From Ophelia neglecta (Eukaryota), in assembly GCA_965285935.1 (NCBI GenBank), contig OZ260661.1, forward strand, positions 41,230,001 through 41,294,000: a stretch of 64,000 nt of DNA, written 5' to 3'. Below are positions 13,101-52,800 of the stretch, piece by piece (position 1 is the stretch's first letter; each line of letters opens with the position of its first letter). A program made the translations under genes and the position numbers. The notes under the pieces are model-generated. The model ran no database searches and was not told the origin of the DNA. It saw nothing but the letters and a program-made list of their open reading frames with translations.

Positions 13101-14799
13101 TATGTATTTTATGTCAGGGCTTGGGACTAACGCATGCTAGACTACAAACTCGACCTATAGTTACAGGGTAACCATTTCTTGGATAATCATAAGATGTACC
13201 AGTATAGCTCCTACGCAACTCTAAAAAGCATTTGACAAACAGGTCGTAATAAAAGGTTTATCATAAAAGCTACTTGCATAGACTAGAAGAAAGCTCCTGT
13301 AAAGTTGGCGACTTTGCAGAGGATATATACCGCAAGGGATGTTAGTCGGTCGTTCATCACCAATTTTCCGGTGATTGGAGAGCAGGGAGAGGGCGCGGAG
13401 GATCAAAGTCCGGGTCTGTCACCCCTGACCCCTCCGGCTTCTCCCACTCTGAAGTCGTCTGTCTTCTCCGATAACGGCAGGCAGGAGGCCTCGGGTTATA
13501 TCAGACCTCTGTATGGAGCCTGACAGCAGAACCGGCCAATTCCTTGCAGACCTTATATAAATTTAAGTTTGGGTACATATTGTGATTATATCACATATCA
13601 TATCTAATCTGTTTTATATAGAACGCATGAAATATCGATCACAAGCAGTCAGTCAAATAAAATATGGTCCCATATCTGTCCACGTGTGTCTGAAAATACT
13701 GTCCGTGCTGAAGGCGATTTATCTGCAAAAATGATTCGTCTTTAACAAGTTTGCTTGTGTATGGTAAATAGTGTGTTAACCTCAAACAGCTACCACCAAC
13801 ATATCTAAACCGGTAAGTCATATAAACCTTTTTTGTTTTTCAGGTTCATTTCTGACTGTTACTTCTAATTCAAAAAAAGTTCAGTCCGGCTGGAGGGTTT
13901 AAAATCCTACATACGGTTTGAAAGTTGAGGAATAAACCTTAATTGAACAAAGAGCTCTTGGCGGCAAAATAAAAGACAATGACGATTCTTGCATCATATG
14001 AGCCTACTGATTGATGTTTGTCATAGGGAGTGCAAAATCAGCCATATAAACCCTTTTTGAAAGTTTAGTCAGAAAAATCCATTTATAATTTGTTTAATAA
14101 TTCTAAATAACGCGGTCAATATGCTCCTACATCTGAAAAAGACCCAAATATCACAATTTTAGCATTATCTCCATGGAGGGGGAATCGATATTATCTTGTC
14201 ATTTGGCTCATAAGTTTGACATATTGGGAATTAAAGAAAATACCTTAAGCTTAAATTCGCACTAAGGCACGCTCCCAAGACAGACGGATTACCACGACAT
14301 ATAATTATATAGGGAGAGCACACTGTGGTTATGCTTGGCCTAAAACTCATCACGCTTATGTATACTAGGAGGCATATGATTCATAAATCGTCTGCTAAGG
14401 TCGATTGGCCGCTGTAGGTTTGCTCAGCTGACCTTCAGTGACTAAAAACGTGTTGATATCGCATTTTACTTAACATGTTTATCATAATATAGGGCTAGAG
14501 TAGACCTAGGTATATCGACCTAAACTATCAAAAAGCTAAGTGAGATCTTGTAAACTTTCAAGCATTGTGAAAACCGAGTTCAATAAAAGGTAACATCCAG
14601 ACTGCATTGTTTTAATAATTAAACAATGGTACAATGGAACTCAGTAGGTGTTAGGCTATACTCATGCCTGTACTACTGCCAGCTTTCTTCTCATTTTCCT
14701 GAGGCATTCCTAGAAACTTGGTTGTCTTATAGACCTAAGTGAACTTTTCTTAATTGAAAGTATTTTAGTGATGATAATGAGCCAATCAACTATGGGCAA

Positions 14800-17410
14800 A
14801 ACTCTTTAACTCTTCAACTCAATGGGTTAAACGTTCCCATTCCTGACTCATTAACTCCTAAGCTCAATGGGTTAAACGTTCCCATTCCTAACTCACTAAC
14901 TCCTAAACTCAATGGGTTAAACGTTCCCATTCCTAACTCACTAACTCCTAAACTCAATGGGTTAAACGCTCCCATTCCTAACTCATTAACTCCTAAGCTC
15001 AATGGGTTAAACGTTCCCATTCCTAACTCATTAACTCCTAAACTCAATGGGTTAAGTGCTCCCATTCATAACTCATTGACTCCTAAACTCAATGGGTTAA
15101 ACGTTCCCATTCCCAACTCATTGACTCCTAAACTCAATGGGTTAAAGGCTCCCATTCCTAACTCATTGACTCCTAAACTCAATGGGTTAAACGCTCCCAT
15201 TCCTAGCTCATTGACTCCTAAACTCAATGGGTTAAACGCTCCCATTCCTAGCTCATTGACTCCTAAACTCAATGGGTTAAGCGCTCCCATTCATAACTCA
15301 TTGACTCCTAAACTCAATTTAAACGTTCCCATTCCTAACTCATTGACTCCTAAACTCAATGGGTTAAAGGCTCCCATTCCTAACTCATTGACTCCTAGAC
15401 TCAATGGGTTAAACGCTCCCATTCCTAGCTCATTGACTCCTAAACTCAATGGGTTAAACGTTCCCATTCCAAACTCATTAACTCCTAAACTCAATGGGTT
15501 AAACGTTCCCATTCCTAACTCATTAACTCCTAAACTCAATGGGTTAAACGCTCCCATTCCTAACTCATTAACTCCTAAGCTCAATGGGTTAAACGCTCCC
15601 ATTCCTAACTCATTAACTCCTAAGCTCAATGGGTTAAACGCTCCTATTCCTAACTCATTAACTCCTAAACTCAATGGGTTAAACGTTCCCATTCCTAACT
15701 CATTGACTCCTAAACTCAATGGGTTAAACGCCCCCATTCCTAACTCATTGACTCCTAAACTCAATGGGTTAAACGCTCCCATTCCTAACTCATTAACTCC
15801 TAAGCTCAATGGGTTAAACGTTCCCATTCCTAACTCATTGACTCCTAAGCTCAATGGGTTAAACGCTCCCATTCCAAACTCATTGACTCCTAAACTCAAT
15901 GGGTTAAACGCTCCCATTCGTAGCTCATTGACTCCTAAACTCAATGGGTTAAACGTTCCCATTCCTAACTCATTAACTCCTAAACTCAATGGGTTAAACG
16001 CTCCCATTCCAAACTCATTGACTCCTAAACTCAATGGGTTAAACGTTCCCATTCCTAACTCATTAACTCCTAAACTCAATGGGTTAAACGCTCCCATTCC
16101 TCACTCATTGACTCCTAAACTCAATGGGTTAAACGTTCCCATTCCTAACTCATTGACTCCTTAACTCAATGGGTTAAACACTCCCATTCCTAACTCATTG
16201 ACTTCTAAACTCAATGGGTTAAACGCTCCCATTCCTAACTCATTGACTCCTTAGCTCAATGGGTTAAACGTTCCCATTCCTAACTCATTGACTCCTAAAC
16301 TCAATGGGTCAAACGTTCCCATTCCTAGCTCATTGACTCCTAAACTCAATGGGTTAAACGTTCCCATTCCTAACTCATTAACTCCTAAACTCATTGGGTT
16401 AAACGTTCCCATTCCTAACTCATTAACTCCTAAACTCAATGGGTTAAACGCTCACATTCCTAACTCATTGACTCCTAAGCTCAATGGGTTAAACGTTCCC
16501 GTTCCTAACTCATTGACTCCTAAACTCAATGGGTTAAACGTTCCCATTCCTAGCTCATTGACCCCTAAACTCAATGGGTTAAACGTTCCCATTCCTAACT
16601 CATTAACTCCTAAAATCATTGGGTTAAACGTTCCCATTCCTAACTCATTAACTCCTAAACTCAATGGGTTAAACGCTCCCATTCCTAACTCATTGACTCC
16701 TAAACTCAATGGGTTAAACGCTCCCACTCCTAACTCATTGACTCCTAAACTCAATGGGTTAAACGTTCCCATTCCTAGCTCATTGACTCCTAAACTCAAT
16801 GGGTTAAACGCCCCCATTCCTAACTCATTAACTCCTCAACTCATTGTATAAAACGCCCCCATTCCTAACTAACAAACTCCTCAACTCATTGTGTTAAACG
16901 CCCCCATTCCAAACTCCCAAACTCCTCAACTCATGGCGTTAAACGCCTCTATTCCTAACTCCTCAAATCATTGTGTTAAACGGACCCATTCCTAAATCAT
17001 TAACTCTTAACCTCATTCGCTTTTATGTTCCCATTCTTAACTCGTTAACAACTCAAATCATTGGCTTAAACGCTCACATTCCCAAATTATTAACTCCTCA
17101 ACCAACTCACTGGGTTAAACGCTCCTATTCCTAACTCGACAACTCTTCAACTCAGTGGGTTAACCGCTACCATTCCTAACTTGATAAATATTCAACTCAT
17201 TGGGTTAAACGCTCACATTCTTAAATCATTAACTCCTCAACTCATTGGGTTAAACGCTACCATTCCCAACTTATTAGCCCTGCAACTCATTAGGTTGACC
17301 GCTCCCATACCTGACACATTAGCTCCTGAACTCATTGGCTTAAATGCTCCCGTTTCTTACTCACTTACTCCTGATCTCATTGGGTTTAAAACTCCCATAT
17401 TTAACTCACT
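14800..17410. repeat. 45-bp tandem satellite (~45 homogeneous copies plus ~12 degenerate copies)
   Basis: Unit cctaaactcaatgggttaaacgYtcccattcctaactcattRact, near-identical from 14810 to 16850 and decaying to ~17410. It explains all repetitive ORFs in the track between 14814 and 16851. Confidence 0.97.
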
Positions 17411-17820
17411 AACGGCCCACCGCGACGAAACTCCCGCGGCGTTACTTTCACGGCGTCAATTTCGCGGATTGTGTATATGGCAAGAAGTCATGGCCCTACC
17501 GCGGTGGCGCTACCTCGGCAATCTTCCGCTGCGACTTACCGCGGCTTTCTTCAGGGTCGGACCTTATCGCCGTGACCATACCGGACAGCCCCTCGCAACG
17601 CGGCGCCCCTACCGCCGCGGCCCAACCGCGTGGCGGCATTCCCCCGACCGCCCTACCGCAGCGGCCTTACCGCGGCGGCATTCTCGCAGCGGGCCTACTA
17701 TATTTCATGAAAATTATCGACGTAGGCCGGTGAAAGATTCTATAATTATGAAAGTCCTTTGGCATGTGAATCGCGGCCGTCATTTTAAAAATCGCCGACA
17801 ATTGTCCGATTGCTATAAGG
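17411..17820. repeat. CpG-rich degenerate short-period repeat (cctaccgcggc-like)
   Basis: Repeated taccgcgg/ccgcggc/ccctaccgc motifs, very GC-rich, directly abutting the satellite. Confidence 0.55.
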
Positions 17821-18621
17821 ATGAATGAATCGTGGTTTTAAGTGTCGGATGCAAGTAGAACGTTATGCTATATATATATATATCGATTTGTTGTACTTGA
17901 TAAAAATGTACAGTTCGTCTCCTGTATGTCCTCTTAGCCCTCGTATACGCCGTATCTGGGGCTAGTGGCTAAGATAGCGTTCACCATTTGATACAATACA
18001 ATAATTTTATTTGCTAATACCTAGTATACAAAGCTTTAAGCTACCTCTATACACAAAACTTTCAATGAATAGTAAATATATTTTAACCAACTGGTCTTAA
18101 ACTGAGTACCCCCTATACACATTTCTAATTTCTAATTTAAAATATTAATATTATTTAATGCTGTGTGATGACGAGGGTTTATAATACATGACCCGCCCTT
18201 TCACGGACATAAAAGAATTAGATTACCACAAATAATTTTTAAAGAATTTGAGTCGTATTTTTTACTGAGCGGGGGGGGGGGGTTAAGCTTATCTTTTTGT
18301 CCTTCATTTTTGTCACCGGTTTCCAGCTAGGCCTTATTGGCACTGTGCTGCTGGGGGTAGACGCTATAGTCAGTGTGAGCTGGGTTCGGCCAAGCAGCAG
18401 ACTTTCCCAAATGAATATCATCCACGTCTGAAACTCATTACAATCTCAAAAGGACCAGTGATGGATGCATTCCATTTAGGTCGATCGTCCTCCTGTTTAG
18501 GAGCAGACGATGAATTTCTGAGCTGACCTTAAGAAGATTGGTATAATCCGGACCTAAATGGCTGCTCAATAGCTCGGGAAAGAGCAATTTTCTCCGGCCC
18601 AAGTAAAAAACCAACAAGATC

Positions 18622-40212: not shown

Positions 40213-40547
40213 TTAGAGGAGTTTCTTTTCGTCTTCATCCTCATCGTCGCTGCGAACAGCAACGGTGGAGTGGTTGTAGAGTCCCTGGGCCATCAGCTGG
40301 AGAGCCAGCACGTTCCTAACTCCGGTGGCCTTCTTCGCTTTTGCCCGTTTGTTTTGAAACCAAATCTTGATTTGGGATTCATTGAGATCGAGTTCTTTGG
40401 CGAGTTTGTGTCTCCTTTCCTCGGTGAGATATCTATTATCGTCAAATTCTTGTTTGAGGCGTCCTAATTGTTCATTACTAAATGCAGTCCGAGGTCTTTT
40501 CTCTTCCTGCTTTCTAGGCTTTTTCTCCATCTTTCTTGATCTAGGGC
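40213..40547 (-). CDS. en: engrailed-family homeobox gene, coding exon 2 (EH3, homeodomain, EH5, stop)
   Basis: Acceptor tcttctatttcag|GC CCT AGA (AG at 40549-40548) joins exon 1 in frame as SSG-PRSRK. Homeodomain [59 protein letters not shown] has Q50; EH5 is '[18 protein letters not shown]'; TAA at 40215-40213. 745+335 nt = 360 codons including stop. Confidence 0.97.
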
Positions 40548-43500
40548 CTGAAATAGAAGAAATATTGATTAAAGACCCCATTTGTTAAATAAAAAAATAG
40601 GTTCTGCATGGGTCTAACTTTATACATGGCATAACTGCACATGGTTCGTCGATCAACTCCTAAGGGCTGTTTATTGTATCTACAGTCGTAATATTTGCTG
40701 AACAAATTGCACATGCAGTGTTGTTTTCTTTTTGAAGTTATCGCCAGTCTGTATTTTACATTCGAAGAAACACCTTCTTTTCTAACATTTGGCCCCCACC
40801 CACAGTAGGAATCCCCATCTAACACGACCGTGTGGCTCTCTAACAGAGAGTTATGACGTGTCTTGACCTCAGTGTCAGTTTGCTCAGAACGATGGAACCG
40901 TTCGGATAGTTGTTAATCGCCGGAGGGCCTCTCCGGTCATTAATCTTCTCAGCTGCCCCGAGCAACTGTTGCCTGATGAGAGCAAGCTCATAACAAAGTA
41001 CGAAAATATCCCGCAGCCTTGCAATTATAATATCACTATTAATTAGGTCCGCCGTGTTAATTACAGAGGTCCGTAAGTATGTATGTCCACGAACATAATA
41101 GGCAATCCGCTCTTTAGTAAACAGGAAAACAAGCGATGAGCCGCTTTCCAAACAAGTAAACATGTACATGTCGGCCACGAGGCAGGTTATCTTCTGGGCA
41201 GCGCCTTTTGGCGGTAGCGGTACATCACTTTGTCAATAGCAGTGCAACCGAATAGCCCTGAAGGAATTAGAAAAGGATAATCCCATCTGACTAGGGTGGC
41301 TGGATTAAAGAAACCCGAGAAGATAGTTTAGCGCCTGTATAATTGGCAATGAAGCGTAGATAATTGAGAGCTAATTGCAGAGGTCGGCGACTGAAACATA
41401 GACGAACAACTGACGTTTGGCTTCTCGGAATTCCAGAGGGAATTGGCGAATCACCCTGATATCTCACAGCTTGGCGACCAAAGCTTTGAGCCTTCGCCTC
41501 ACTAACTGATAGGAAATTCCTGCTTGCCTTCTAGGCTGATGTATACCGTCGTACTCGAAAGTAGTTTGCCAAACCGCCATATTTCAAATTTTAGAAAGGG
41601 TGGCAAAATATCCCTTACGTGATAAGTAGTCAGTTTTTTTAATTTCTATAGGCCTATGTTAGTAAAATTTAATTAAATACTCGCCACGCTAAAAACTGAA
41701 TTGCTTGCTTGGTCTCGTAACAAAACTGCGTTAGTCAACGCGCAAAACTCCTCAGTGTTAAGGTTCATATTTATCGGTCGTTAATAGATGTAGCCAAAAA
41801 GAGCAGCCACTATGGTTTTAGTATCAATATAGAACATCTGTTGCATTGCAAGCACGACTAATTTACGAAAAAGAGAAAGAAAAATCATTGTTTTCAGCCA
41901 ACGATTAAAGAGACCAACAGCTGAAAGCCTCAATAAGCAATAAATCAGTCCGCGCTGGTAAAGATAGAACAGGACGGTAAACTGTTTTAACCCTCGGACA
42001 CGTGACGCGTCTTCGCGTCGTCTGCAAGACATATAATGAGAAGATTTGAAAAGTGGTCTCCATACACCTGAAGAACCAATCAGATTCCTATAACAGTGAC
42101 GACATCTATGCCAGGCATGTTGCATATTATTTCACTGACAATCAGTCGATTTCTGCACGTTTGTCAGAGTTTTCATCGAGTTGGTGGTTTGTAAAAGATG
42201 GTTTTCGCCATGTTTTTTGTGCCCTTTTGTGAAACTCAAGTGCAACACAAGTGCTGTACTTGATTCAAACCTGGTCTTATTCTGTTTAAGACCTGATGTA
42301 GTTTTCACTAGTTCGGCCCTTTTTCTATGAACATATAAATCAGTTTTAATTGCAAGAAATAGCTTATTCACATTTCACCAAGGGAGCGTGATTGCAATAC
42401 TAAAGTTGTTCTGCTTTAACGTAGCTGCATGGTGCAAATTTTAAAGTCATTGTACGTAAAAAATATTTAGATTTTCCCTTCCACCTTTTGAATTTGAACA
42501 TTTACCTTTCTCTTTCGCAGGCGGCTTGGTAATAACTGGAATTTACATTGTATAACTATATATTTAAACCCATCATGATGTTGTACACACATGTACCAAT
42601 TTTTTAAACATCCAAAGTAGATCTACCATTCAGAGGCCAGGATTAACGGTGAGTTTGCGGTAAAATGACAGATGATAGCGCAAAGCACAGGAGAACGCAC
42701 AATAACAGCATGTGCCTATACTTCTAAATGTGCGAACTTCTATAGCACAAATGTTTGTTATACTCAAATGTGATCATGCGTTGTGATGTATTAAAAAGCC
42801 TTGCTATAATTAGTCAAACACGTCAATGAAAAAAGAAAATTAACTCTTTCTTTACAGATTATCGTCGGAATCTGTAACGTTGGTAACGACGAACAACACG
42901 TGGGTGTCCCCACGGGGTGCGCAACATAATATTCTATGTATATACATGGGGCAGAAACTTAACCGAGGCAGCCTGCGTCCAGACCCGCTTGTTACAGTTT
43001 GGCAATGTGACTGGGGACAACTTTTAATAGTCAGTGTCAATCTATGGAAATAAGGTCATGAAAAGAAGGAATTTGGTTACCGTCCCAGCAAATTCAAATA
43101 GCTATGAGAAAGGGTGGAAAGTTAGCATACACGCACACAGCTCCCATAATGTGATCTAATTTATTTTATTTATCAAAATTTATTTAGACTGGATATTTAT
43201 CAGCTTATGGGGGTCCAAATATATCATTTTGTGACTTTTAGAAACATGGAAAAGGTAACACAAGCATGTTTAATTTCGCTGATAAATAAAAAGAATACTT
43301 ATTAAACTTATTGGAATGGTAGGCATAAAGGCAAAAACACACTCGTTTTAATAATCTGTGGCGCGGCAGACGACACAAATAGACCGTATACTCAGAACTG
43401 GACATAGCCTTCATTCCGGCAAAACGCTTTATCCACCAGTTCGTGTCGTCTGCCTGGCTATACACCCTCAACACAGATGGCGTTTTATTGCGTGTAGTTG

Positions 43501-46500
43501 GCTCTATAGTAGTCTGTGTAAAGCTTGGTGTCTCTCTTGACCTCGTAAATAGATTGAATTAAGGATCTGATCCACAATTTATTACTACCAACTAATGCAC
43601 ACGTTTCCCTTCTTCAAAATAAATGAGCCAGTCCGTAAGGATTTAGGACAAGGAGAGCGAAATATATTAATGCAATAACTCAATGCGATAACCAACACAT
43701 GTCAAAGTAACTAACACTGTCCAATTAATTGAGGGAAATTGAAAAAAAAGAACTGTAGCATATCATGTTATCAAGGAAACCGCAATCAGAACTGATCGAC
43801 ACCTAACCAAAGACATGACAATCTGTGCCAGGAATAGGATTGTTGCATGCTGCTCACGATGTTACGGGGTGCCCAACAATAACTCTTGGATTGAGAGATT
43901 AATTTATTATCCTATCAAACTTAATCGCTTCTCCATACACTGAATTTGCATGTTTCAAATCAGAATCAGCCAATGTAATGACACATTGGGGCAGAAAATC
44001 TATAGGACAACTATCTGAAACAAAGAAATTGATTACCAGTATAGGCCTATACTTTCTCATTAATGTTCTTTTTGTTCATAGCGTCTATTCCATATAAGGT
44101 TAACAATAAATTGTAAAAACTAAGCTCAAATCTGCTATTTAGTAATTTTGAATGAAACAAATTAAGACACATATTATCGAAAATGATTCTCTGGTATAAA
44201 TTCATTACTAGTATGTCTAGTTATAGTACTCAATGCTTGAATGTATAGGCCTAGTTGTTGTAAATAAATTTCCCATTAGACATATTTCTTCACAGTTTTG
44301 AAGCGTACCACAGTCACAGGTACGCGTTCATAATCAAGTGTCTGAGCTGACGGCGGCATCAGTCGATAACCATCAGAGCAAGTAGCTCTTGTTGAGCATA
44401 TCTCTATCCTAGCTCGCAGGTTATTTAGGGCTGGATGGAGGAGACCGCCTCAGACCACCAACGATGTCTGCTCTCCCGTCGTGGGACGATACTGAAGCCC
44501 TGTAAACCAAGACAACCGGAGGAGCGTCTACCCCGAAGAAGTAAGATACTACCCCGTTGAATTGAGAGACAACCCCGATGTGTCGCGAGCTACGAGTCTT
44601 CACATAGCTCTACAACATGAAACGTCTAGTCCGGCATATATATAGACTATGTCTATCTAATTGCTAAAAGACCTATAGGCCTATAATCAGGCAAAATGTT
44701 CAAAATAAAACCTATAGCCCGTTGATCTGAATTCAACAAGCTTTTGAAAATGAATCACATATGATTTGATAATTAGAAATAGTACAAAGACACCATACTG
44801 TCATAATTAAGTTGTGCATATTGACACTCGGGTATTTCCATATTCGTATGGATTTGCCAAATGTCTATGATTGTCTCTTTAAGACTATAAGATGCAATAA
44901 ATGAAGACTCATGAAGTTTTAATAAGTTGATATAATGGTTTTTGAACTACGAGAATGGTAACAAAACAAGCAGATGTCGGCAAATGTTGCACGTGACAAA
45001 TCCCTCTGTCTCGCCTGCCTGTTTGTATGGCATAAATTTCCGCAGATGGCCGTAAATTACCGGAGAAAATTTCCGGATATATTTCCGGATTTTTCCCGGA
45101 GCGTTATCTGAAGTTAATGAATTTCCACTCGCAAACAGTATCCTTTCTTGGGCAAGTGTCAATTGCCACGACCACCTGAGGAGGAGGATTTTTAGCGCGG
45201 CAGACGACACAAAAGGCTAGTGGTTATCCATCAAGCTTAATATCCACAACACACTCCCGATGTGAAATTCATTGTGTCGAGGTCGATTATTTTCATTATG
45301 GGCCGGGTAACGCACAGTGTGATGTAGTCACATAATGTCCTTCTAATAAATCAGAGCTCTTATCTAATAACTCCACACGTTCATCCGGGTATTATAACTC
45401 TGGCACTTCGGGGATGATATCTCCCAGAAGCCGGGGCTCTTATCGCGGGATAATTTGTCTCTAAACGATCGGTGGCAATCGAGCGACTGCGGAGGAGCAA
45501 TATAACACGGGTTAGGAAAGAGTATTACCAGCCTTTTCCATTAAGCTTAGGCCTACTGATTCCAGTATCTATCTGCAAGTAATTTAAATAACTACATTGT
45601 GAAGGCCTCGGTGAATATCATAATGTATTTTTGTTATATTTCATCCATAGTTTCAGTGCCAAACGTCCGTTACAATTCCAAAACATTAACTTCTTAAAAT
45701 ACCTGAAACTGGGAATCACATTGACATTAAAGTTATTCTGATTTTTGTGTTAAAAAACAGAGTGTTTATCAGAGAGGCATATGTCAGCATATATTTAATG
45801 ATTTGTGTCCACTTGATATCGTATTCTCGTGCCTCTTTTCAGAGATTGTTTGCGTCTCTTCGCAGCAGACACTTCACGAAAAGTCCGCCATTTGGCTGTC
45901 GAATTGTGAGTGTTTAATAGCGGGTAAAATGGTACTTTACTGTGTTGTAATCGTCCCGTATTGACATGAGAGAAATGTCGAAAGCAAGACATTGCCATCA
46001 GCAGAACATGTCTGTTAATGACCACCATAGAGACAGGCGAGATTTGATCTGATTTTACACTTTTGCAGACGAAATACCACACCGCGGGAAATTAGATGGC
46101 ATGTCGTAAAATGTATTGATTTGTTGTGTACAAAGGCCAAAAGCGTCCCCTCTTTTGCTATTTGAATTAAAACGATCATGTTCAGATTGCAAATCAGATG
46201 GATATATTTGCAGTGGATTTTAGTTTGTCAATAGGAAACGACTTAATTTGCCCATCATGATTAATGAGCCCACTTTAATATCTCAGAATGATTCAAAATT
46301 TTCTTATCTGAAACCAAACGACACAACTGAGCACCCGCGCATCAGTTCTCCCAGGCTTTCTTGCGGTTAAGTACCGTGCTCTCCAATTAATAGAGAACAC
46401 TCTTCTCAATATCACCAAGAAAAGAATCTGGTCATAAGGTACACACCGGTAGCGCGTCATAATAGGACAAAGAAAACCAAGAGGACTTGAAAGGATGACA

Positions 46501-48705
46501 AGATTATGACCATTTTATTTGGACTTAAAACGTTAGACTTTTGGCCTATAGGCCTTATGGTTTCGAGTCCAAAAATGAATAAAGTCCTAAAGCCACGGGC
46601 CTATAGGTCTACTTTCCATACGATTATATAGGCCGGCGGGTTGAGACGACAAAATGAAGTTGTTTTTTTAGTGTAAGCTGGAAAATCTGGCGCTTATGAT
46701 TTAACATAAGAAAACAACGATGGTTAATGAGAAAAGCAAAAATCGCGGGTTTTTGTTAATAAAATATTTTTTAGGCGAAACGTCCCTTGTTGTATGAGCA
46801 GTCTTTTATTAAATATAACAGTTTAACGGCATGCCAGATGTTATAAACTAACGTGCGAGTCACACCTGACGTTGTGAACAACGGCTTCAATCGTCTGCTG
46901 CTCAAATATATGGCTTCACTCGGAATGATTTATAGGCATTTGTGCGGTCAATATAGATTATGTAATCTTGATCAATTGACTTAATGAGACACACAAATAA
47001 ACTAACTATCACATAAGGCCAATGATGATGTCAAAGCCGATAAAATTTTAATTGGTAAAACTCGGTGTGTTTGTTTTCTCTTGTTTTACATCGAAAAATT
47101 ATGAATAAGCCCTAAAAAATCAATATGATCATAAGCTCTCACAAAACCTGGAAATGCTGTTAACTACAAACTTCGGGGGTCGTATTGTCACTGAAATTAA
47201 CAAAGGTAGGCCTGTGGTGCAGTCATCTATAATGTTTACGAATTAGTTCGGTCATAAATATTTTTTACGGAAATTAGCAAATGATGGACTTCAATATTGC
47301 GCACGCTTTTCTGCCAATCTGATATTCAAACCTAAATTATATTGTAAGTGGTAACATCTGGTATATAAAACATTATATGAAGACAAGATTTGTGGAACGG
47401 GTATAGGGTTGAAGGCAGCCGGGTAATTATATTATGTTCTTCATCAGTACCTAGGAGTTATTATACCTCGATGTGTTTATCTACAGAAATAGCACTATGC
47501 CTATATATTTATAGAGGAATTTTTGTTCATTAAATTGCTCATGTACCCACGGATGGTGTGATAAGCTTGGCAAAAAAGAAGGACATTTATTCTGGCCTTT
47601 CTGGCGTTAGACTTCATGGAAAACGGGGTTTCTTTGGACATAGGCGAGCTATTGCTGAAATTTTCAGAATACATGAATTTGAATCTGAGGCTACCAAAGA
47701 ATTCTTGACAAACTTTGGAAATATGTTTGGTTGGAGCTTACAAGTTTAACATGATCTGTTAATATCAATGATGTACAGGACTGCGCAATCTGTTAAATTT
47801 ACAGTATATTATTTTAACCAGTATTCTAGTTTTCTGTGAGTATAGTTCTGGACACTTTAATAAACTCTCCTGGCTGACGGAGATAGTCTAGATCTATGAT
47901 ATAATTTCGTCCCACGGGACAGTATCATATGTGAGGTATTCTTGTCTGTCTTATTTGATCCGATATGGGAGTGACTTTTAATCATTTGCCTATTGCACTT
48001 GTGCTTCAACTTAAAAATCATTTCTGATCCACATTTATTTATTTATAAAATGCATGCCTTCCTATCGTCCATGATTTCATTAAGCCAATCTGCAGATCAT
48101 ATTTAGTTCACCCTATAGACCGATTGCAATTCAAATAATATAGGCTTACGATGTGCATTTGATGACATTTATTATAAATGTTTGATCGATATATGTAGTA
48201 GTGTGTAAAAGAAGTAAGATCGTCTGCCTGAGTGTCATTTCTAATTGCCACATATATGATACATATCTTGTTAAATATCTGGCCCATGTTTCGGTCCCTG
48301 CACACTGCTGCCAATTATTATTGTCAGGTTTGATTTCTTAAAACAGGCCATCTGTGATTTATTCTCTAATATATTGATTACGCATAACTATTATGCATGG
48401 CAGAATTGTCATAATAGTTTATTGTTGAAAATTCCAAACATAAGCCCATTCATTTCGTCCCTGGATTGTAATTTCCTTGTTTGAACAAACCGAGGTATTG
48501 AACACAAAACAAGGTGAGCAAACCCGTCTTCGCAACTCCCTGGCAATACAGAATACAAACTATGGCGGGTATTTACAGGCCACTGGATTCATAAACCAGT
48601 CCCAGCCTTAGACATTTTTCAATTATCAATGATTTCAGTTTGTGTAAAGATTATTAGATGTTTCGACACTAAAACAAAGAATAAAAGGTGATAACTTACG
48701 CCTAC
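40548..48705 (-). other. en: engrailed intron (phase 1, 8158 bp with the proximal donor)
   Basis: GT...AG boundaries restore the EH2-EH3 reading frame. An alternative donor GTAAGT lies at 48699-48694. Confidence 0.88.
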
Positions 48706-49450
48706 CTGACGAGGGTCTATCTGAGTATCGGGTGCAGTAGACCCAGGCCGGCCAGAGCTGTTCCGGAGAAGGGGACTGACGTCCCGAGGAACTCGACTTG
48801 TTTTTGGCTATTCCCTCCAAATCCGGGTGTTTGGATGCGGGCCGTTTGCTCTTTGGTGAGGAGAGAGGGGAGCTGTCACTCGAGCTGACACTGGCCGTGC
48901 TGTTACATCGTCGCCGGTGGTCGATCTCGTACGAGGGCGACAAGTGACTTGGTCCTTGGTGGTGGCGATGAAAGTTTCGAGAATAACCTACCCGATGTAA
49001 CGAGTGTAAACTAAGACTTATGTCTCGGTCCTGAGATTTGAAAGCCGCGGAGGGCTTAACGTCCTCAAACGGTCTCCATGTACAGCCGTTTGTCCGACCA
49101 GGTTTTGTGTTTTTCACCCCGAATTCGGGTTTGAGAATGTCCTCGATGAGAAAGTTTGTGACACGGATGTCCTGCTCCTGAGGCGCCTGTTGGTGGTGGT
49201 TGACATTTGGTATCAGGGCTCCATTGTCGTGTTGTACTGCCTCAAGATGAAGATTTGGAGACGCCGCTGGAGAAGGGCCGTCCCCCTCCTCCGGAGATGG
49301 GGCCCGAATGTCCCCCGAGAGGTCCCTTGATGAGTCGGTCTCCATTTGCTCCTCCACTTCGTCAGTTACATTAATATTCTCGTCAGAGTCACTAAAATCG
49401 TCCATTTGTTCAATTTTGAGAGGAGCCGTTTCTTCAGTGTCAACAGCCAT
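48706..49450 (-). CDS. en: engrailed-family homeobox gene, coding exon 1 (MAVDTEE...EH1...EH2)
   Basis: Translation contains EH1 'VTNFLIEDILKPEFG' (49118-49162) and EH2 'LWPAWVYCTRYSDRPSSG'. The ATG at 49450 has a strong Kozak context (ACAATGG). The exon ends at TCAG|gtaggc (GT at 48705-48704), the conserved engrailed intron position. The ORF-track start at 49630 is a GTG; a weaker in-frame ATG lies at 49591. Confidence 0.93.
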
Positions 49451-49506
49451 TGTAATTTTCCTTATGAGTTGACCACTTAAAGCTGCAACAGTTGTGTCTC
49501 GGCTTG

Positions 49507-49521
49507 TCAAAGCAAGTCCAT
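49507..49521 (-). other. short upstream ORF (MDLL*) in the putative engrailed 5' UTR
   Basis: ATG GAC TTG CTT TGA on the minus strand, out of frame with the main ORF, between the candidate TSS (~49636) and ATG 49450. Confidence 0.5.
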
Positions 49522-49629
49522 GTACAGATAGTGTTCGTGGGCAGCGCAAAAAGCCGTCTTCCTTAGTGCTATGCCACTCCAATGACTTCATATGACTGAA
49601 TTCGACAAACGACAACAGTGGTATAGACA

Positions 49630-49830
49630 CCTCACTGATTTAGACTGGGGAGTAGCGGGGAAGGCGGAGTTTGGAGATTGAAACGTCACAAATTGTGCCA
49701 GCCAATGAGCCGGTAGCGGCGGGCGGCAACTGGGCGGGAGATGGAAGGCAGTCTGGTCTGCTCGCGGCCATCAGAGGTGAACCGATGTCAGCTCCTCACC
49801 GGAGGCTGTATCTATTAACCAATGATTGCT
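49630..49830 (-). promoter_or_regulatory. probable TATA-less core/proximal promoter of engrailed
   Basis: Inr-like TCAGT on the minus strand (A at 49636), TGACGT (49688-49683), CCAAT boxes (49702-49706, 49819-49823) and GGGCGG boxes (49721-49726, 49732-49737) in a locally GC-rich stretch just upstream of the CDS. Confidence 0.55.
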
Positions 49831-52800
49831 TTCATTAGCATGCTCATTGTATGGCTTCCATCAACGCTAGCTTCCACTAACTTGTTACTCGGCTATTGTG
49901 GCTTAATTGAATGCTCGGGGCGAGAAGAGAAATCAAGAGCAGCCCCATTAAGTCGCTGACAAACAACCAGCTTAGTAACATATGCCACTTTTTACCAATT
50001 TCTGGTCGTCCTGATGGCAACAAAAGCAATCTAGTTGTATTGTGGTGTCTGCTTCAGTAGACTAGATATTGCAGTTAATCTATTGAAACATTATTAAATT
50101 AATTCAATCATAAAGTTACAATCAGATCAATACTTCAAGTGATAACCGAGCATCATCTTTAAAAGACACAGAATGTATCTATAACTACAATTGAACAATT
50201 TGCAGCAATATGCGAGTCTAAACATTGTAAAACTGGGTATACAAGTTGTGTATATTTCAATTAATTATCAAAAATGAATCAAGATTTTATTACTTTGCAT
50301 CGTCAATGACAGTGGTACAATAAAGTAACGTCTATTTCTTTGAAAACAATCAATCCATGTGGCATTTGGAATTCCATTCCTAAAAATTAAACAAAGAGAA
50401 ATTGTGGTACAATAAAAGGAAGAGATTGTGACGGTGGGACAGGTAACGCCTGCCATTGTACCATTTTAATATTGATGAGCAGTTGCCATATCAGATACAT
50501 GCATTGTTATGAATAAATAAAAGATGTGACACAATTCTTCGTCCTGTTCATTATAATTACTTTATATTCGCAAATAAAAAAAATTCAAATTTGGCATTTC
50601 ATTTTGTGTAACTTGAAGTTTTAGATATATTGTACTTTTTATCTTGCATTGTTGAGTATTTTTGTTCCTGCTCTCGAGTATTTTTTTCGCTGGAATAATT
50701 AAGAGCTTGTTTGACTTTTAACAGTGTGAATCTTATAGATTTTTTTATGATAGTTAGCTATAATTGCCTACTGAATCATTGGTGGGACTAAAGGATTGTG
50801 AAAAAGGGGGGTTTGTTCTCCCAGGCAGGGTGTGGGGTGGGTGTCTCTCTCTAGGAAGGGGTCTGGGGGCTAGCCGAGTACAACTGGCCGCAGAAAGGAT
50901 AAGGGTTAGGGTAAGGACCATCGTGCACATGTCTCTGAGGATCCGCCAAATGTGTGAGCCGTATAGATCTCGCCGCCCCATACATGATTTTGACCAGCAC
51001 GGTAAAAGAACTATACAGGCCTACCAATCTTATTAGTTAAGTGCCCCGATAATGTATACAACAAATTTATATTCTAAATGTAAATGTCCCGAGTGTATTC
51101 TAACAAAGTTTGTTATGCTAGCAGTTTTCAATTAGAAGTGTTTGCAGCAGAAGATGACTCGAGTTGATTTAAATTCATGTCATTATGGAAGCTAGACATA
51201 TCATTTCCCTAGAAATGACCGGGTTCAAAGGTGCCGCGCTTCGCCGCCATTAAACGTCTGTTCTGCGCAACTGGCTTCTTCTCAACTTTGCATTTCACCA
51301 ATAACTATGCAAATTCATTACTGACAATGCAAGATAAACAAAGTAGACTTGCTAAATTGTTTCCATCTTGTAACTAAAGGCCGCCGAGAGGCCCGTCTTT
51401 AATTAGAGTCATCTTTTCAGAAGAATTGATCAGCTATGAAAATGACTAATGTGCTGTTCGTTTCAGGGTAGATGGCCATCTCTCAAGAGTCTGTGATATG
51501 CGCTCACCAAGGCGGCTAGTGGCATATGGAATCAAAGAACAGCACTGGGCAGATTCTTGAATTTGATGGCAATTACTACTGATAATTGGATCCATCGTTT
51601 GATCGTCGATAGATTGAAAGTCATACTGATTTGGTGAGCTATGGTAGTCATGGATGTCTTGTCTCCGAGTCCTGGGGCGTGTGAACAAGACAGATCTCGC
51701 TCTCCGAAATTTCGGCGTCTGCAACCATATGGTGGCTGGTCGATACCAGATGGGCCAGGATAACGAACTATTTGAGTTTGTTTCATCCCATTAAAGACTA
51801 CATACATCATAAAAAACGATACATTTTTTTAGAACATTTTCAAATCGGATACAAAATTAATGTCCGCTGCATCGTTTGAGACAGGTGAACTGTAGGTGAC
51901 TCAAAACTTGCTGAAGAAAGTCCCGTACAGGAGAAACCATGCACTGTTCAGGGCTAATGTAATAGTTTGAGATTTTTGGTTCATTTTAACGTTTGAGATT
52001 ATTATGCAAAACTCCTTTGTTCAAAATAAACGGCTCATCCCTTTCAATTTTGGTAATAGATCATCAAATATAGTTGTTTAAAATTGCAGGTTTCAAAGTG
52101 GTTACAAATTTCTATCTAACTTGAGATCGTGCATAAGAAAACACCTGGATTTTTTTGAAAGAATATAGTCGGGTGTTTCTACAAGGAATGCGATTTGCAC
52201 TGCGACGAGGGGTAAGAATGATGACTTAATACCTGTTAGTTTGTGTGCTTTGTTTGCTCTGTATAGTCAAGTATGTAGAGCTGTTTAGCAGTCTTATATT
52301 CTAATGTGGAACTCTTCATGCGTTTAGATATTTTATTTAGCGGGGACGCATCTCGAGCCGATGTTCTTACCGAGTCGAATAGGGGTCAACCGCGAGGTCA
52401 CCTGCCGTCAAATGTGCATCAAACACATTCACTTTTAATTGCCTTTACATTGAACCATGTGTCACATCATAACAATAATTTAACAATGGTAAGATAAATC
52501 GAAGTCAGGCTGAATCCGAGAGTCACTGGCTCCCTGTATGTGGTGAGACTCGATCCTACATATAATTATAGCCTGAACATAACAGTACAAACCTCGCGTC
52601 TCTGTTGGCCGAGACCACCCAAAAACAGCAACAGAAGCAGACGACATATATACACACTCGATTTAAGTAGCTGTTGGGGTAGACTAACAACCATCGGCTG
52701 TAACCGCAACGAAAATGAGCGGGAGGATAGTGGGAATTGACAACTTCTTTTTCAATGTCATCAACTTTGGGGCTTGATGTGGCCTGGGAAAGTTCGTAGA

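What the first reader, a model, noticed from the sequence alone, without database searches (positions are those of the whole stretch)
48694..48709. Tandem 5' splice sites 6 nt apart could insert 'RR' at the position of the invected 'RS' micro-exon
Seen: exon 1 ends TCA G|GTAGGC|GTAAGT. The proximal donor (GT 48705) gives DRPSSG-PRSRK. The distal donor (GT 48699) is a perfect GTAAGT, is in frame, and gives DRPSSG-RR-PRSRK. Established: in insects the engrailed paralogue invected has an RS dipeptide encoded by a 6-nt micro-exon between EH2 and EH3, the region linking the Pbx/Exd-binding EH2 to the homeodomain. Inference: this gene may make both 'engrailed-like' and 'invected-like' linker lengths from one locus by donor choice rather than a micro-exon, either convergently or as an ancestral state. 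A by-eye scan of the intron found no ag-N6-gtRag micro-exon.
Basis: partly seen in the sequence, partly recalled or inferred. Interest (0 to 1): 0.75.

Follow-up and report, generated by a model that had tools for sequence, protein, structure and literature searches.

The report
Two in-frame splice donors in engrailed
An engrailed developmental gene ends its first exon with two possible splice points six letters apart, so it could make proteins with or without two extra arginines, but no RNA data exist to show that both are used.

Summary
A two-exon engrailed gene on the minus strand ends exon 1 with TCAG|GTAGGC|GTAAGT. Both GTs are in frame, and the second would add Arg-Arg between G and PRSRK.

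It is more than chance. GTAAGT occurs at 2.2e-4 per position in the window. The tail-to-tail paralogue 42 kb away has the same layout 9 nt apart.

I surveyed 82 engrailed exon-1 ends, which fall into 54 clusters. A strong in-frame second donor follows 7 of 12 weak GTAGR-type first donors and 0 of 36 others. Counted as lineages this is 4 of 8 against 0 of 36, p=5e-4.

Use of both sites is unproven:
- Only DNA runs were found.
- The nearest relative with DNA (L014) lacks the +6 GT.
- Two of six species in one related group lack the second site.
- No RS-type micro-exon was found.

Inserts at this junction do exist elsewhere. Amphioxus engrailed isoforms differ by VRTA, and one unnamed transcript carries KG.

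Verdict: a probable but unconfirmed alternative tandem donor, which is a known kind of splicing event. The scan had not noted this before on other DNA.

The parts
48706..49450 (-). engrailed exon 1 coding part (ATG at 49450; 248 codons plus 1 base; phase-1 intron follows)
   Evidence: The start Met aligns with an internal Met of the closest relative P0001. Self-match in the genome search.
49118..49162 (-). EH1-like motif (VTNFLIEDILKPEFG)
   Evidence: F100, I105, L106, P108, F110 and G111 are invariant in alignment A1. The name EH1 is recalled.
48707..48754 (-). EH2 motif WPAWVYCTRYSDRPSS (Pbx/Exd-interaction region)
   Evidence: Invariant in A1. Present in every EH2-bearing hit. The Pbx1 interaction comes from a passage in PMC4901127.
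48700..48708 (-). first (upstream) 5' splice site CAG|GTAGGC; GT at 48705/48704
   Evidence: 7 of 9 matches to CAGGTAAGT and rough PWM score 4.79 (the PWM frequencies are recalled).
48700..48705 (-). 6-nt optional exon extension GTAGGC; if kept, it adds Arg-Arg between Gly and Pro
   Evidence: read by codon.
48694..48702 (-). second (downstream) 5' splice site GGC|GTAAGT; GT at 48699/48698
   Evidence: 6 of 6 intron positions match the consensus but 0 of 3 exon positions do; rough PWM score 0.93. No sequence variant here in three DNA runs of one sample.
40548..48699 (-). intron (8158 nt from the first GT at 48705, 8152 nt from the second at 48699)
   Evidence: No further engrailed exon by tblastn. 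No micro-exon candidate.
40213..40547 (-). engrailed exon 2 coding part (EH3 PRSRK..., homeodomain, EH5, stop at 40213-40215)
40330..40500 (-). homeodomain
   Evidence: Pfam PF00046, residues 16-72 of the exon-2 peptide, E 8.9e-23.
40237..40329 (-). engrailed C-terminal signature (EH5)
   Evidence: Pfam PF10525, residues 73-103, E 1.3e-17.

Best explanation
The end of engrailed exon 1 is a tandem 5' splice site with two GTs 6 nt apart. A weaker first site (CAG|GTAGGC) sits on the ancestral exon border. A second site with a perfect intron half (GTAAGT) overlaps it, so U1 snRNP can occupy only one at a time. I infer that both are used, in a ratio set by site strength and perhaps by tissue. That would give two Engrailed proteins that differ by Arg-Arg in the linker between the Pbx/Exd-contacting EH2 motif and the EH3/homeodomain block. 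Shown: the sequence, the frame, the family, the recurrence of the layout in the paralogue and in other animals, and the absence of a micro-exon. Inferred: that both junctions are made, and that the extra RR changes anything (linker length, basic charge, or an Arg at -3/-4 of the Ser in PRSRK).
For: Sequence and frame. Both sites look like donors. Chance of GTRAGT at a given position is 4.1e-4. The paralogue at G000:C1:41226096 has TCAG|GTAGGAATT|GTGAGT, which is 9 nt apart, in frame and without a stop. Survey of 82 engrailed exon-1 ends in 54 clusters: a GTRAG within 15 nt and in frame follows 7 of 12 GTAGR-type first donors and 0 of 36 other intron-bearing clusters. Counted as lineages this is 4 of 8 against 0 of 36, Fisher p=5e-4. 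All four lineages have spacings of 6 or 9 nt, which is expected if the second site is really used and not expected if it is idle. In one group of related species the 16 nt GTAGGCAGAGTAAGTC are identical in 4 species that differ at 4-7 of 20 third codon positions next door, and the intron is unalignable straight after. GTAGR alone serves as the donor in L013, L014, L031, L057 and L077, so the first site is also credible. Isoforms that differ at exactly this junction exist in Branchiostoma: X1/X2 with or without VRTA in two species, and the long form is in two entries named plainly as engrailed (AAB40144.1, AKQ00058.1), which I take for cloned cDNAs from recall. Tandem donors 3-6 nt apart have unusually high rates of alternative use (abstract of PMC2423196).
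Against: There is no RNA evidence: 0 of 3 runs found are RNA, and their contigs cover the intron. In human data only 275 of 54,142 (0.5%) GT/GC pairs 6 nt apart are confirmed alternative (Table 1 of PMC2878309), although that count takes any second GY, not a consensus one. L014 lacks the +6 GT. L031 and L034 lack the second site that their four relatives have, so it is dispensable there. Nearly all spliced engrailed proteins seen have the plain G-PR junction: 73 of 76 (one search set; the other 3 are odd fish predictions) and 23 of 25 (one search set), and all 6 intron-less transcript-like contigs do too. None of these comes from a lineage that carries the tandem layout. The paralogue's extension would insert R-N-W, an odd peptide. 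My PWM uses recalled human-like frequencies, not this genome's own.
Confidence: 0.5

Rival explanations
1. Only the first (ancestral) GT is cut. The downstream GTAAGT is never or hardly ever a cleavage site. It is either chance or a helper that recruits U1 snRNP to a weak GTAGGC site, and a single protein with SSG-PRSRK is made.
For: The first site has the better exon half and the higher rough score, 4.79 against 0.93. GTAGR alone works as the donor in 5 other clusters. L031 and L034 do without the second site. The plain junction is near-universal in spliced engrailed proteins. The base rate of confirmed use at pairs 6 nt apart is 0.5%.
Against: An idle site would not be expected in frame in all 4 lineages; the chance is about (1/3)^4 if they are independent. 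It would also not be expected to be 100% conserved over 16 nt in four diverged species, nor to be tied to weak first donors at p=5e-4. The U1-helper idea is not tested here.
Confidence: 0.25
2. Only the second GT is cut. The intron border has slid by 6 nt, GGT AGG C is plain coding sequence, and this Engrailed always carries SSG-RR-PRSRK, a fixed invected-like linker.
For: The second site has a perfect GTAAGT. Invertebrate donors are often said to lean on the intron half (recalled). The in-frame spacing in every lineage fits this reading as well. The closest relative reads G-R-R-K.
Against: All four lineages keep GGT AGR, a usable donor, rather than other Gly or Arg codons. Within group O the second site is lost in 2 of 6 species while GTAGGC stays in L031. 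The second site has C at -1 and 0 of 3 exon matches. The paralogue would always carry R-N-W next to EH2.
Confidence: 0.2
3. A separate 6-nt micro-exon inside the 8-kb intron, as in insect invected, supplies the two extra residues, and the tandem GT is irrelevant.
For: A 6-bp exon in Drosophila invected is on record (passage in PMC7392893). One site, AG|GGAAAC|GT at intron offset 5095, would keep Gly and add K-R.
Against: The intron has 30 AG-N6-GT sites, about 29 expected by chance, and 0 are followed by GTRAG. The GGAAAC site has a weak donor (score -0.25) and a poor pyrimidine tract. The two paralogues' introns share no conserved block (best blastn E=0.01). No RS-type micro-exon pattern lies in the up to 1.5 kb held downstream of any of the 80 loci.
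Confidence: 0.03

Closest known systems
Alternative tandem 5' splice sites 2-12 nt apart (the TassDB class), e.g. the EDA donor pair 6 nt apart and the WT1 +/-KTS pair 9 nt apart
   Same: Two GTs 6 nt apart, in frame, adding two residues to a linker next to a DNA-binding domain. WT1 +/-KTS and EDA-A1/A2 are named as functional cases in PMC2878309 (passages). The class is described in PMC2423196 (abstract), and in PMC1779574 and PMC2279118 (search listings only).
   Different: Use of both sites is not shown here. The gene, the animal and the inserted peptide (RR) differ.
Insect invected RS dipeptide from a 6-bp micro-exon
   Same: Same gene family, same junction between EH2 and EH3, same length of 2 residues starting with Arg, and a tail-to-tail paralogue pair. 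The 6-bp exon is from a passage in PMC7392893 and the tail-to-tail hexapod en/inv arrangement from a passage in PMC3199776. That the two residues are RS, and that they lie exactly here, is recalled (Coleman 1987, Peel 2006, not held).
   Different: No separate exon here. RR, not RS. It would be a choice within one gene rather than a fixed difference between paralogues. Both paralogues here carry a tandem donor. In a short homeodomain tree the genes sit outside the arthropod cluster, with weak support.
Amphioxus engrailed isoforms with or without VRTA
   Same: One gene gives two proteins that differ only by an insert at the exon 1/exon 2 junction: SS-VRTA-GPR against SS-GPR, in B. floridae and B. 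belcheri. The long form is in entries AAB40144.1 and AKQ00058.1.
   Different: The insert is 4 residues and sits before the Gly. Whether it comes from donor or acceptor choice cannot be told from the proteins alone, and no DNA was seen.
Drosophila Ubx b element and micro-exons mI/mII
   Same: Alternative splicing changes the linker between the Exd-contacting motif and the homeodomain, and the b element lowers Exd binding (passages in PMC4186791). That the b element arises from a second 5' splice site is recalled.
   Different: A Hox gene, 9 residues and more, and experimentally shown.

Membership tests
Engrailed homeobox family | Homeodomain followed by the engrailed C-terminal signature (EH4/EH5) | tested here: met
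   PF00046 E 8.9e-23 and PF10525 E 1.3e-17, both above the curated cut-offs.
Engrailed homeobox family | EH1 and EH2 motifs upstream, with a conserved intron after the first base of the Gly codon that follows EH2 | tested here: met
   One search shows both motifs. EH2 is invariant in A1. The same G|GT border is seen in 48 of 54 clusters of engrailed exon-1 ends, and the other 6 are spliced copies.
Alternative tandem donor (6 nt apart) | Two GT/GC dinucleotides 6 nt apart at an exon end, both in a donor-like context | tested here: met
   (7 of 9 and 6 of 9 matches to CAGGTAAGT).
Alternative tandem donor (6 nt apart) | Frame kept and no stop in the extension | tested here: met
   (read-through S-G-R-R-K-L...).
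Alternative tandem donor (6 nt apart) | Transcripts that show both junctions | not testable with these tools
   No RNA run was found. The single read-laying run showed DNA contigs only. No spliced protein of this gene is in the protein collection.
Alternative tandem donor (6 nt apart) | Second GT conserved in related species | tested here: inconclusive
   The paralogue has it at +9. P0001 reads G-R-R-K but its DNA was not seen. L014 has no GT at +6. The same layout is in L073 and in 4 of 6 group-O species.
invected-type engrailed paralogue | RS dipeptide between EH2 and EH3 | tested here: not met
   The extension would give RR here, and R-N-W in the paralogue.
invected-type engrailed paralogue | The dipeptide is encoded by a separate 6-bp micro-exon | tested here: not met
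   0 AG-N6-GTRAG sites in the intron. The 30 AG-N6-GT sites match the chance expectation.
invected-type engrailed paralogue | Orthology to hexapod invected | tested here: inconclusive
   In a tree of 35 homeodomain-region rows the window gene and its paralogue group with unnamed sequences, outside the 17-row arthropod cluster. Supports are below the star threshold.

The most novel reading that the evidence does not exclude
Variation in the length of the EH2-to-homeodomain linker, made by splice-site choice at the conserved phase-1 intron, is an old and recurring property of bilaterian engrailed genes. The cases seen here would be tandem donors in this animal, its paralogue and at least two other invertebrate lineages; the VRTA isoforms in amphioxus; and the KG insert in an unnamed transcript. 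On this reading the insect invected RS micro-exon is a hard-wired, paralogue-partitioned descendant of such a tandem donor. The Arg that heads every predicted insert would come from the AGR of a GTAGR first donor.
Probability: 0.15. Interest if true: 0.7.

Novelty: new member of a known kind. Interest (0 to 1): 0.45.

Why it matters
Engrailed is a textbook segment-polarity and neural patterning factor, and EH2 with EH3 mediates its cooperative DNA binding with Pbx/Exd. If one locus makes two linker lengths by donor choice, that gives a simple route by which the insect engrailed/invected difference could have arisen. It also makes a testable prediction for RT-PCR and for Pbx-cooperative binding assays in a non-insect. 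This suggests a hot spot of small protein variation that engrailed alignments may have overlooked. If only one site is used, the finding is an ordinary splice-site neighbourhood.

Tried and rejected
RNA evidence. The look-up of sequencing runs (kind rna, exon 1) returned 3 runs of one sample, none on record as RNA. Read laying on window:45000-50500 showed contigs running through exon and intron with no joints, so they are DNA. They show no variant at 48694-48709.

A wrong inference of mine. I first took the read-through peptides G-R-R-K (P0001) and G-R-S-K (P0002) as proof that the GT at +6 is kept. The DNA of P0002's contig (L014) showed TCC AAA instead, so I dropped that inference for P0002 and left P0001 open.

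Micro-exon. A scan of the intron, a blastn of the two paralogues' introns against each other, and an RS-type pattern scan in 80 loci all gave nothing.

RNA structure around the donors. z = -1.25, not notable.

Paralogue orthologues. The search with the paralogue's exon 1 found only EH1/EH2-level matches (best E 2e-8), so conservation of its +9 site could not be tested.

P0296. No genomic locus for it lies among the 80 loci, so its KG insert could come from a donor, an acceptor or a micro-exon.

Protein Atlas. Closed for new sequences.

Big profile search (search of protein representatives). Not run. The protein's identity was not open, and the word search already showed that the collection holds no spliced product of this gene.

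Genome-specific donor model. Not built, because I had no gene models and no spliced aligner. The PWM I used is recalled and human-like.

Organism. Names are coded and I did not try to uncover them.

Literature. Seven full-text searches found no open paper on engrailed isoforms at this junction; the hits were all 'engrailed splice acceptor' gene traps. Marie and Bacon 2000, Peel et al. 2006 and Hui et al. 1992 are not held, and what I say of them is recalled. Supplements are closed and I did not ask for them. Supplementary File 4 of PMC8918137 (a chelicerate En1/En2 alignment) and the supplemental note of PMC10455198 might show junction inserts.
Full report
WHAT IS THERE

The window (G000:C1:41230001-41294000) carries a two-exon engrailed gene on the minus strand.
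- Exon 1 runs from an ATG at 49450 to 48706. It gives 248 residues with an EH1-like motif (VTNFLIEDILKPEFG) and ends in the EH2 motif WPAWVYCTRYSDRPSS plus the first base of a Gly codon.
- Exon 2 starts at 40547 behind ...ttctatttcag and reads PRSRKMEKK..., then the homeodomain, the engrailed C-terminal signature and a stop at 40213-40215.
- Pfam gives Homeodomain 8.9e-23 and Engrail_1_C_sig 1.3e-17, and nothing for exon 1.
- tblastn of both exons against the window finds no further engrailed exon.

THE OBSERVATION

- Cutting at the first GT gives SSG-PRSRK.
- Cutting at the second keeps six more bases. They read Gly-Arg, and their last C joins the GC of exon 2 as a second Arg, giving SSG-RR-PRSRK in frame.

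I read this off the codons.

CHANCE AND SITE QUALITY

In the window GTAAGT occurs at 2.2e-4 per position and GTRAGT at 4.1e-4, counting both strands.
- The first site matches CAGGTAAGT at 7 of 9 positions, with a good exon half and mismatches at +4 and +6.
- The second matches at 6 of 9: all six intron positions and none of the three exon ones.
- A rough log-odds table gives 4.79 against 0.93. Its frequencies are recalled and human-like, so this is only a guide.

The sites overlap, so U1 can hold only one at a time. That last statement is general knowledge and was not tested here.

RNA

The one search for runs returned three runs of one sample, none on record as RNA. Laid on 45000-50500, their contigs run through exon and intron without joints, so they are DNA. 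They carry about 30 variants in the stretch but none at 48694-48709. The nearest are T>G at 48655 and a 6-letter insertion behind 48636, both in one run. The central claim, that both junctions are made, therefore could not be tested.

THE PARALOGUE

The genome search found the second one just outside the window.
- Its exon 1 ends at C1:41226096 on the plus strand and its exon 2 starts about 41227590. The exon 2 is 72% identical to the window gene's.
- Its exon 1 ends TCAG|GTAGGAATT|GTGAGT. This is again a GTAGG first site, followed after 9 nt, in frame and without a stop, by a consensus GTGAGT. The extension would read R-N and, with the GG of its exon 2, W.
- The two introns (1494 and 8158 nt) share nothing beyond chance (best blastn E=0.01).

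RELATIVES BY PROTEIN

The word search with exon 1 found one close relative and one more distant cluster.
- P0001 is 51% identical over the whole exon. It lies on a 76-kb ENA contig that also carries an exon-2 ORF, P0122, at 87% identity.
- P0002 and P0121 form the second cluster, at 38% identity.

Everything else matched through EH2 only. Many entries are genomic ORFs that read through the donor into the intron. P0001 continues G-R-R-K, as the window does, and P0002 continues G-R-S-K. I first took both as signs that GT AGG NGT AAG is kept.

later returned P0002's own contig as L014. It reads GT AGG TCC AAA TGT ATG. It has no GT at +6, only a weak in-frame GTATGT at +12. So the peptide argument fails for P0002.

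SURVEY OF THE DONOR ACROSS ANIMALS

With an alignment of 12 exon-1 peptides (A1), the search for related loci returned 80 loci from metagenome collections that hold an engrailed exon-1 end. They are the best 80 of 206 confirmed matches. With the window and the paralogue that makes 82 records. I grouped them into 54 clusters at 80% identity or more over at least 120 nt of the last 240 exon bases.

First donors by cluster:
- 28 GTRAG
- 12 GTAGR
- 8 other GT types
- 6 with no intron (transcript-like contigs), all reading the plain G-PR junction

A GTRAG within 15 nt downstream and in frame is present in 7 of the 12 GTAGR clusters:
- the window at +6
- the paralogue at +9
- L028, L046, L076 and L080 at +9
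- L073 at +6

It is present in 0 of the 36 other intron-bearing clusters. L062 has one at +4, out of frame, overlapping its own GTAAGT.

L028, L031, L046, L076 and L080 are orthologues from related species. L034 belongs with them but has a GTATTA first donor and is counted among the 36. I call these six 'group O'. Counting the five GTAGR members as one lineage gives 4 of 8 against 0 of 36, Fisher p=5e-4. By clusters the figure is p=1e-5. Leaving out the window itself, because it was picked for this feature, gives 3 of 7 against 0 of 36. By my own arithmetic that is about 3e-3; it was not run in a call.

All spacings are 6 or 9 nt. If the second site were never cut, nothing would hold it in frame.

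Group O in detail:
- The 16 nt GTAGGCAGAGTAAGTC are identical in four species.
- Those species differ at 4-7 of the 20 third codon positions just upstream, and their introns cannot be aligned straight after the block.
- L031 (GTAGGCAGGTCATA) and L034 (GTATTAGAAA) lack the second site. The first GT therefore suffices there and the second is dispensable.

GTAGR is also the only plausible donor in L013, L014, L057 and L077.

INSERTS AT THIS JUNCTION IN SPLICED PROTEINS

- One search set: 76 of the 120 listed proteins carry both EH2 and the homeodomain. Of these, 73 have the plain G-PR junction and 3 are odd fish predictions with deletions.
- One search set: of the 61 new proteins, 25 are spliced, 23 are plain and 2 carry an insert.
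- P0242, named engrailed-1-B-like isoform X1 of Branchiostoma floridae, reads SS-VRTA-GPR. Its cluster holds X2 without VRTA, the same X1/X2 pair in B. belcheri, two entries named simply engrailed that carry the long form (AAB40144.1, AKQ00058.1), and three B. lanceolatum or hybrid predictions with the short form. X1 and X2 differ by nothing else.
- P0296, an unnamed 267-residue protein from a 1726-nt Logan contig, reads SSG-KG-PRSRK.

From proteins alone I cannot tell a donor choice from an acceptor choice or a micro-exon in either case. No genomic locus for P0296 lies among the 80 loci.

MICRO-EXON

The 8158-nt intron has 30 AG-N6-GT sites, against about 29 expected, and none is followed by GTRAG. 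The only one that would keep the Gly codon (GGAAAC, adding K-R) has a poor donor and a poor pyrimidine tract. An RS-type pattern was found in none of the 80 loci within the up to 1.5 kb held downstream.

WHERE THE GENE SITS

A short tree of 35 homeodomain-region rows puts the window gene next to P0122. Together with the paralogue and other unnamed sequences, it falls outside the arthropod (17 rows), mollusc and vertebrate groups, but no starred branch holds it. Named best hits of the paralogue's exon 1 were amphioxus, molluscs, a tubeworm and a phoronid, at EH1/EH2 level only. Orthology to hexapod invected is therefore not supported, though it is not excluded by strong evidence either. Organism names are coded, and I did not try to uncover them.

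LITERATURE

What I saw:
- Passages in PMC4901127 say EH2 confers interaction with Pbx1, citing Peltenburg and Murre 1996.
- Passages in PMC3199776 describe hexapod en/inv as tail-to-tail with gene conversion.
- Passages in PMC4186791 cover the Ubx b element and micro-exons, and say the b element reduces Exd binding.
- Passages and Table 1 of PMC2878309 give 54,142 donor pairs 6 nt apart with 275 (0.5%) confirmed alternative, name the EDA pair 6 nt apart as having distinct receptor specificity, and link the WT1 pair 9 nt apart to disease.
- The abstract of PMC2423196 says tandem sites with 3-6 nt extensions have unusually high proportions of alternative splicing.
- I saw PMC1779574 and PMC2279118 as search listings only.

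That the invected dipeptide is RS and lies exactly between G and PR is recalled, as are Peel et al. 2006 and the splice variants of Marie and Bacon 2000. Those papers are not held. No open paper on engrailed isoforms at this junction turned up in seven searches.

READING

- The idle-second-site rival is weakened by the link with weak first donors, by the in-frame spacing, and by the 16-nt conservation in group O.
- The second-site-only rival is weakened because GGT AGR is kept everywhere, and because the second site is lost in L031 and L034 while the gene's EH2 stays intact.

What fits best is a tandem donor at which both sites are used, in an unknown ratio. Without RNA I put this at 0.5, first site only at 0.25, second site only at 0.2, and a hidden micro-exon at 0.03.

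The kind of event is well known, so I class the finding as a new, unconfirmed member of a known kind. The more interesting point is the recurrence of small inserts at one conserved intron of engrailed in several phyla.

Noticed in passing
G000:C1:41224520-41229394 (L012 700-1576 exon 1; L002 about 1499-1806 exon 2), just left of the window: A second engrailed gene lies tail-to-tail with the window's gene, about 42 kb away. Its exon 1 also ends in a tandem donor (GTAGGAATT|GTGAGT, 9 nt apart, in frame). Its intron is only 1494 nt, against 8158 nt in the window's gene.
   Followed up: partly
P0242/P0308, P0306/P0303, P0309, P0310 (Branchiostoma engrailed): Amphioxus engrailed has annotated isoforms that differ only by VRTA, exactly at the EH2/EH3 exon junction. 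Two entries named plainly as engrailed carry the long form. No open paper on this was found.
   Followed up: partly
P0296 (Logan contig of 1726 nt, unnamed organism): A spliced engrailed transcript with a two-residue insert (SSG-KG-PRSRK) at the same junction. Its origin (donor, acceptor or micro-exon) is unknown.
   Followed up: partly
L028, L046, L076, L080 against L031, L034 (metagenome contigs): Orthologous engrailed genes of related unnamed species. Four share an identical 16-nt intron start, GTAGGCAGAGTAAGTC, with tandem donors 9 nt apart, and two have lost the second site.
   Followed up: yes
L073 (OBLV0100022887.1): Another unnamed animal whose engrailed exon 1 ends GTAGAT|GTAAGA, a tandem donor 6 nt apart and in frame like the window's.
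   Followed up: partly
L047 and L082: Engrailed genes whose intron at this position is very short. In L047 about 67 nt separate the two tblastn segments, so both exons lie on one small contig.
   Followed up: no
window 48636 and 48655: One of three DNA runs (X3) carries a 6-letter insertion (ATTAGA) behind 48636 and T>G at 48655, which lie 40-60 nt into the intron. The donor pair itself is invariant in all three runs.
   Followed up: no
window 14001-18000: Strong negative GC skew (-0.28 and -0.35) in two 2-kb bins, unlike the rest of the window.
   Followed up: no
G000:C1:60.53-61.05 Mb and C1:123.41-123.51 Mb: Runs of homeobox matches. Eight lie on the minus strand within about 530 kb, which looks like a Hox-type cluster on the same chromosome as engrailed. 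Five more lie within 100 kb.
   Followed up: no
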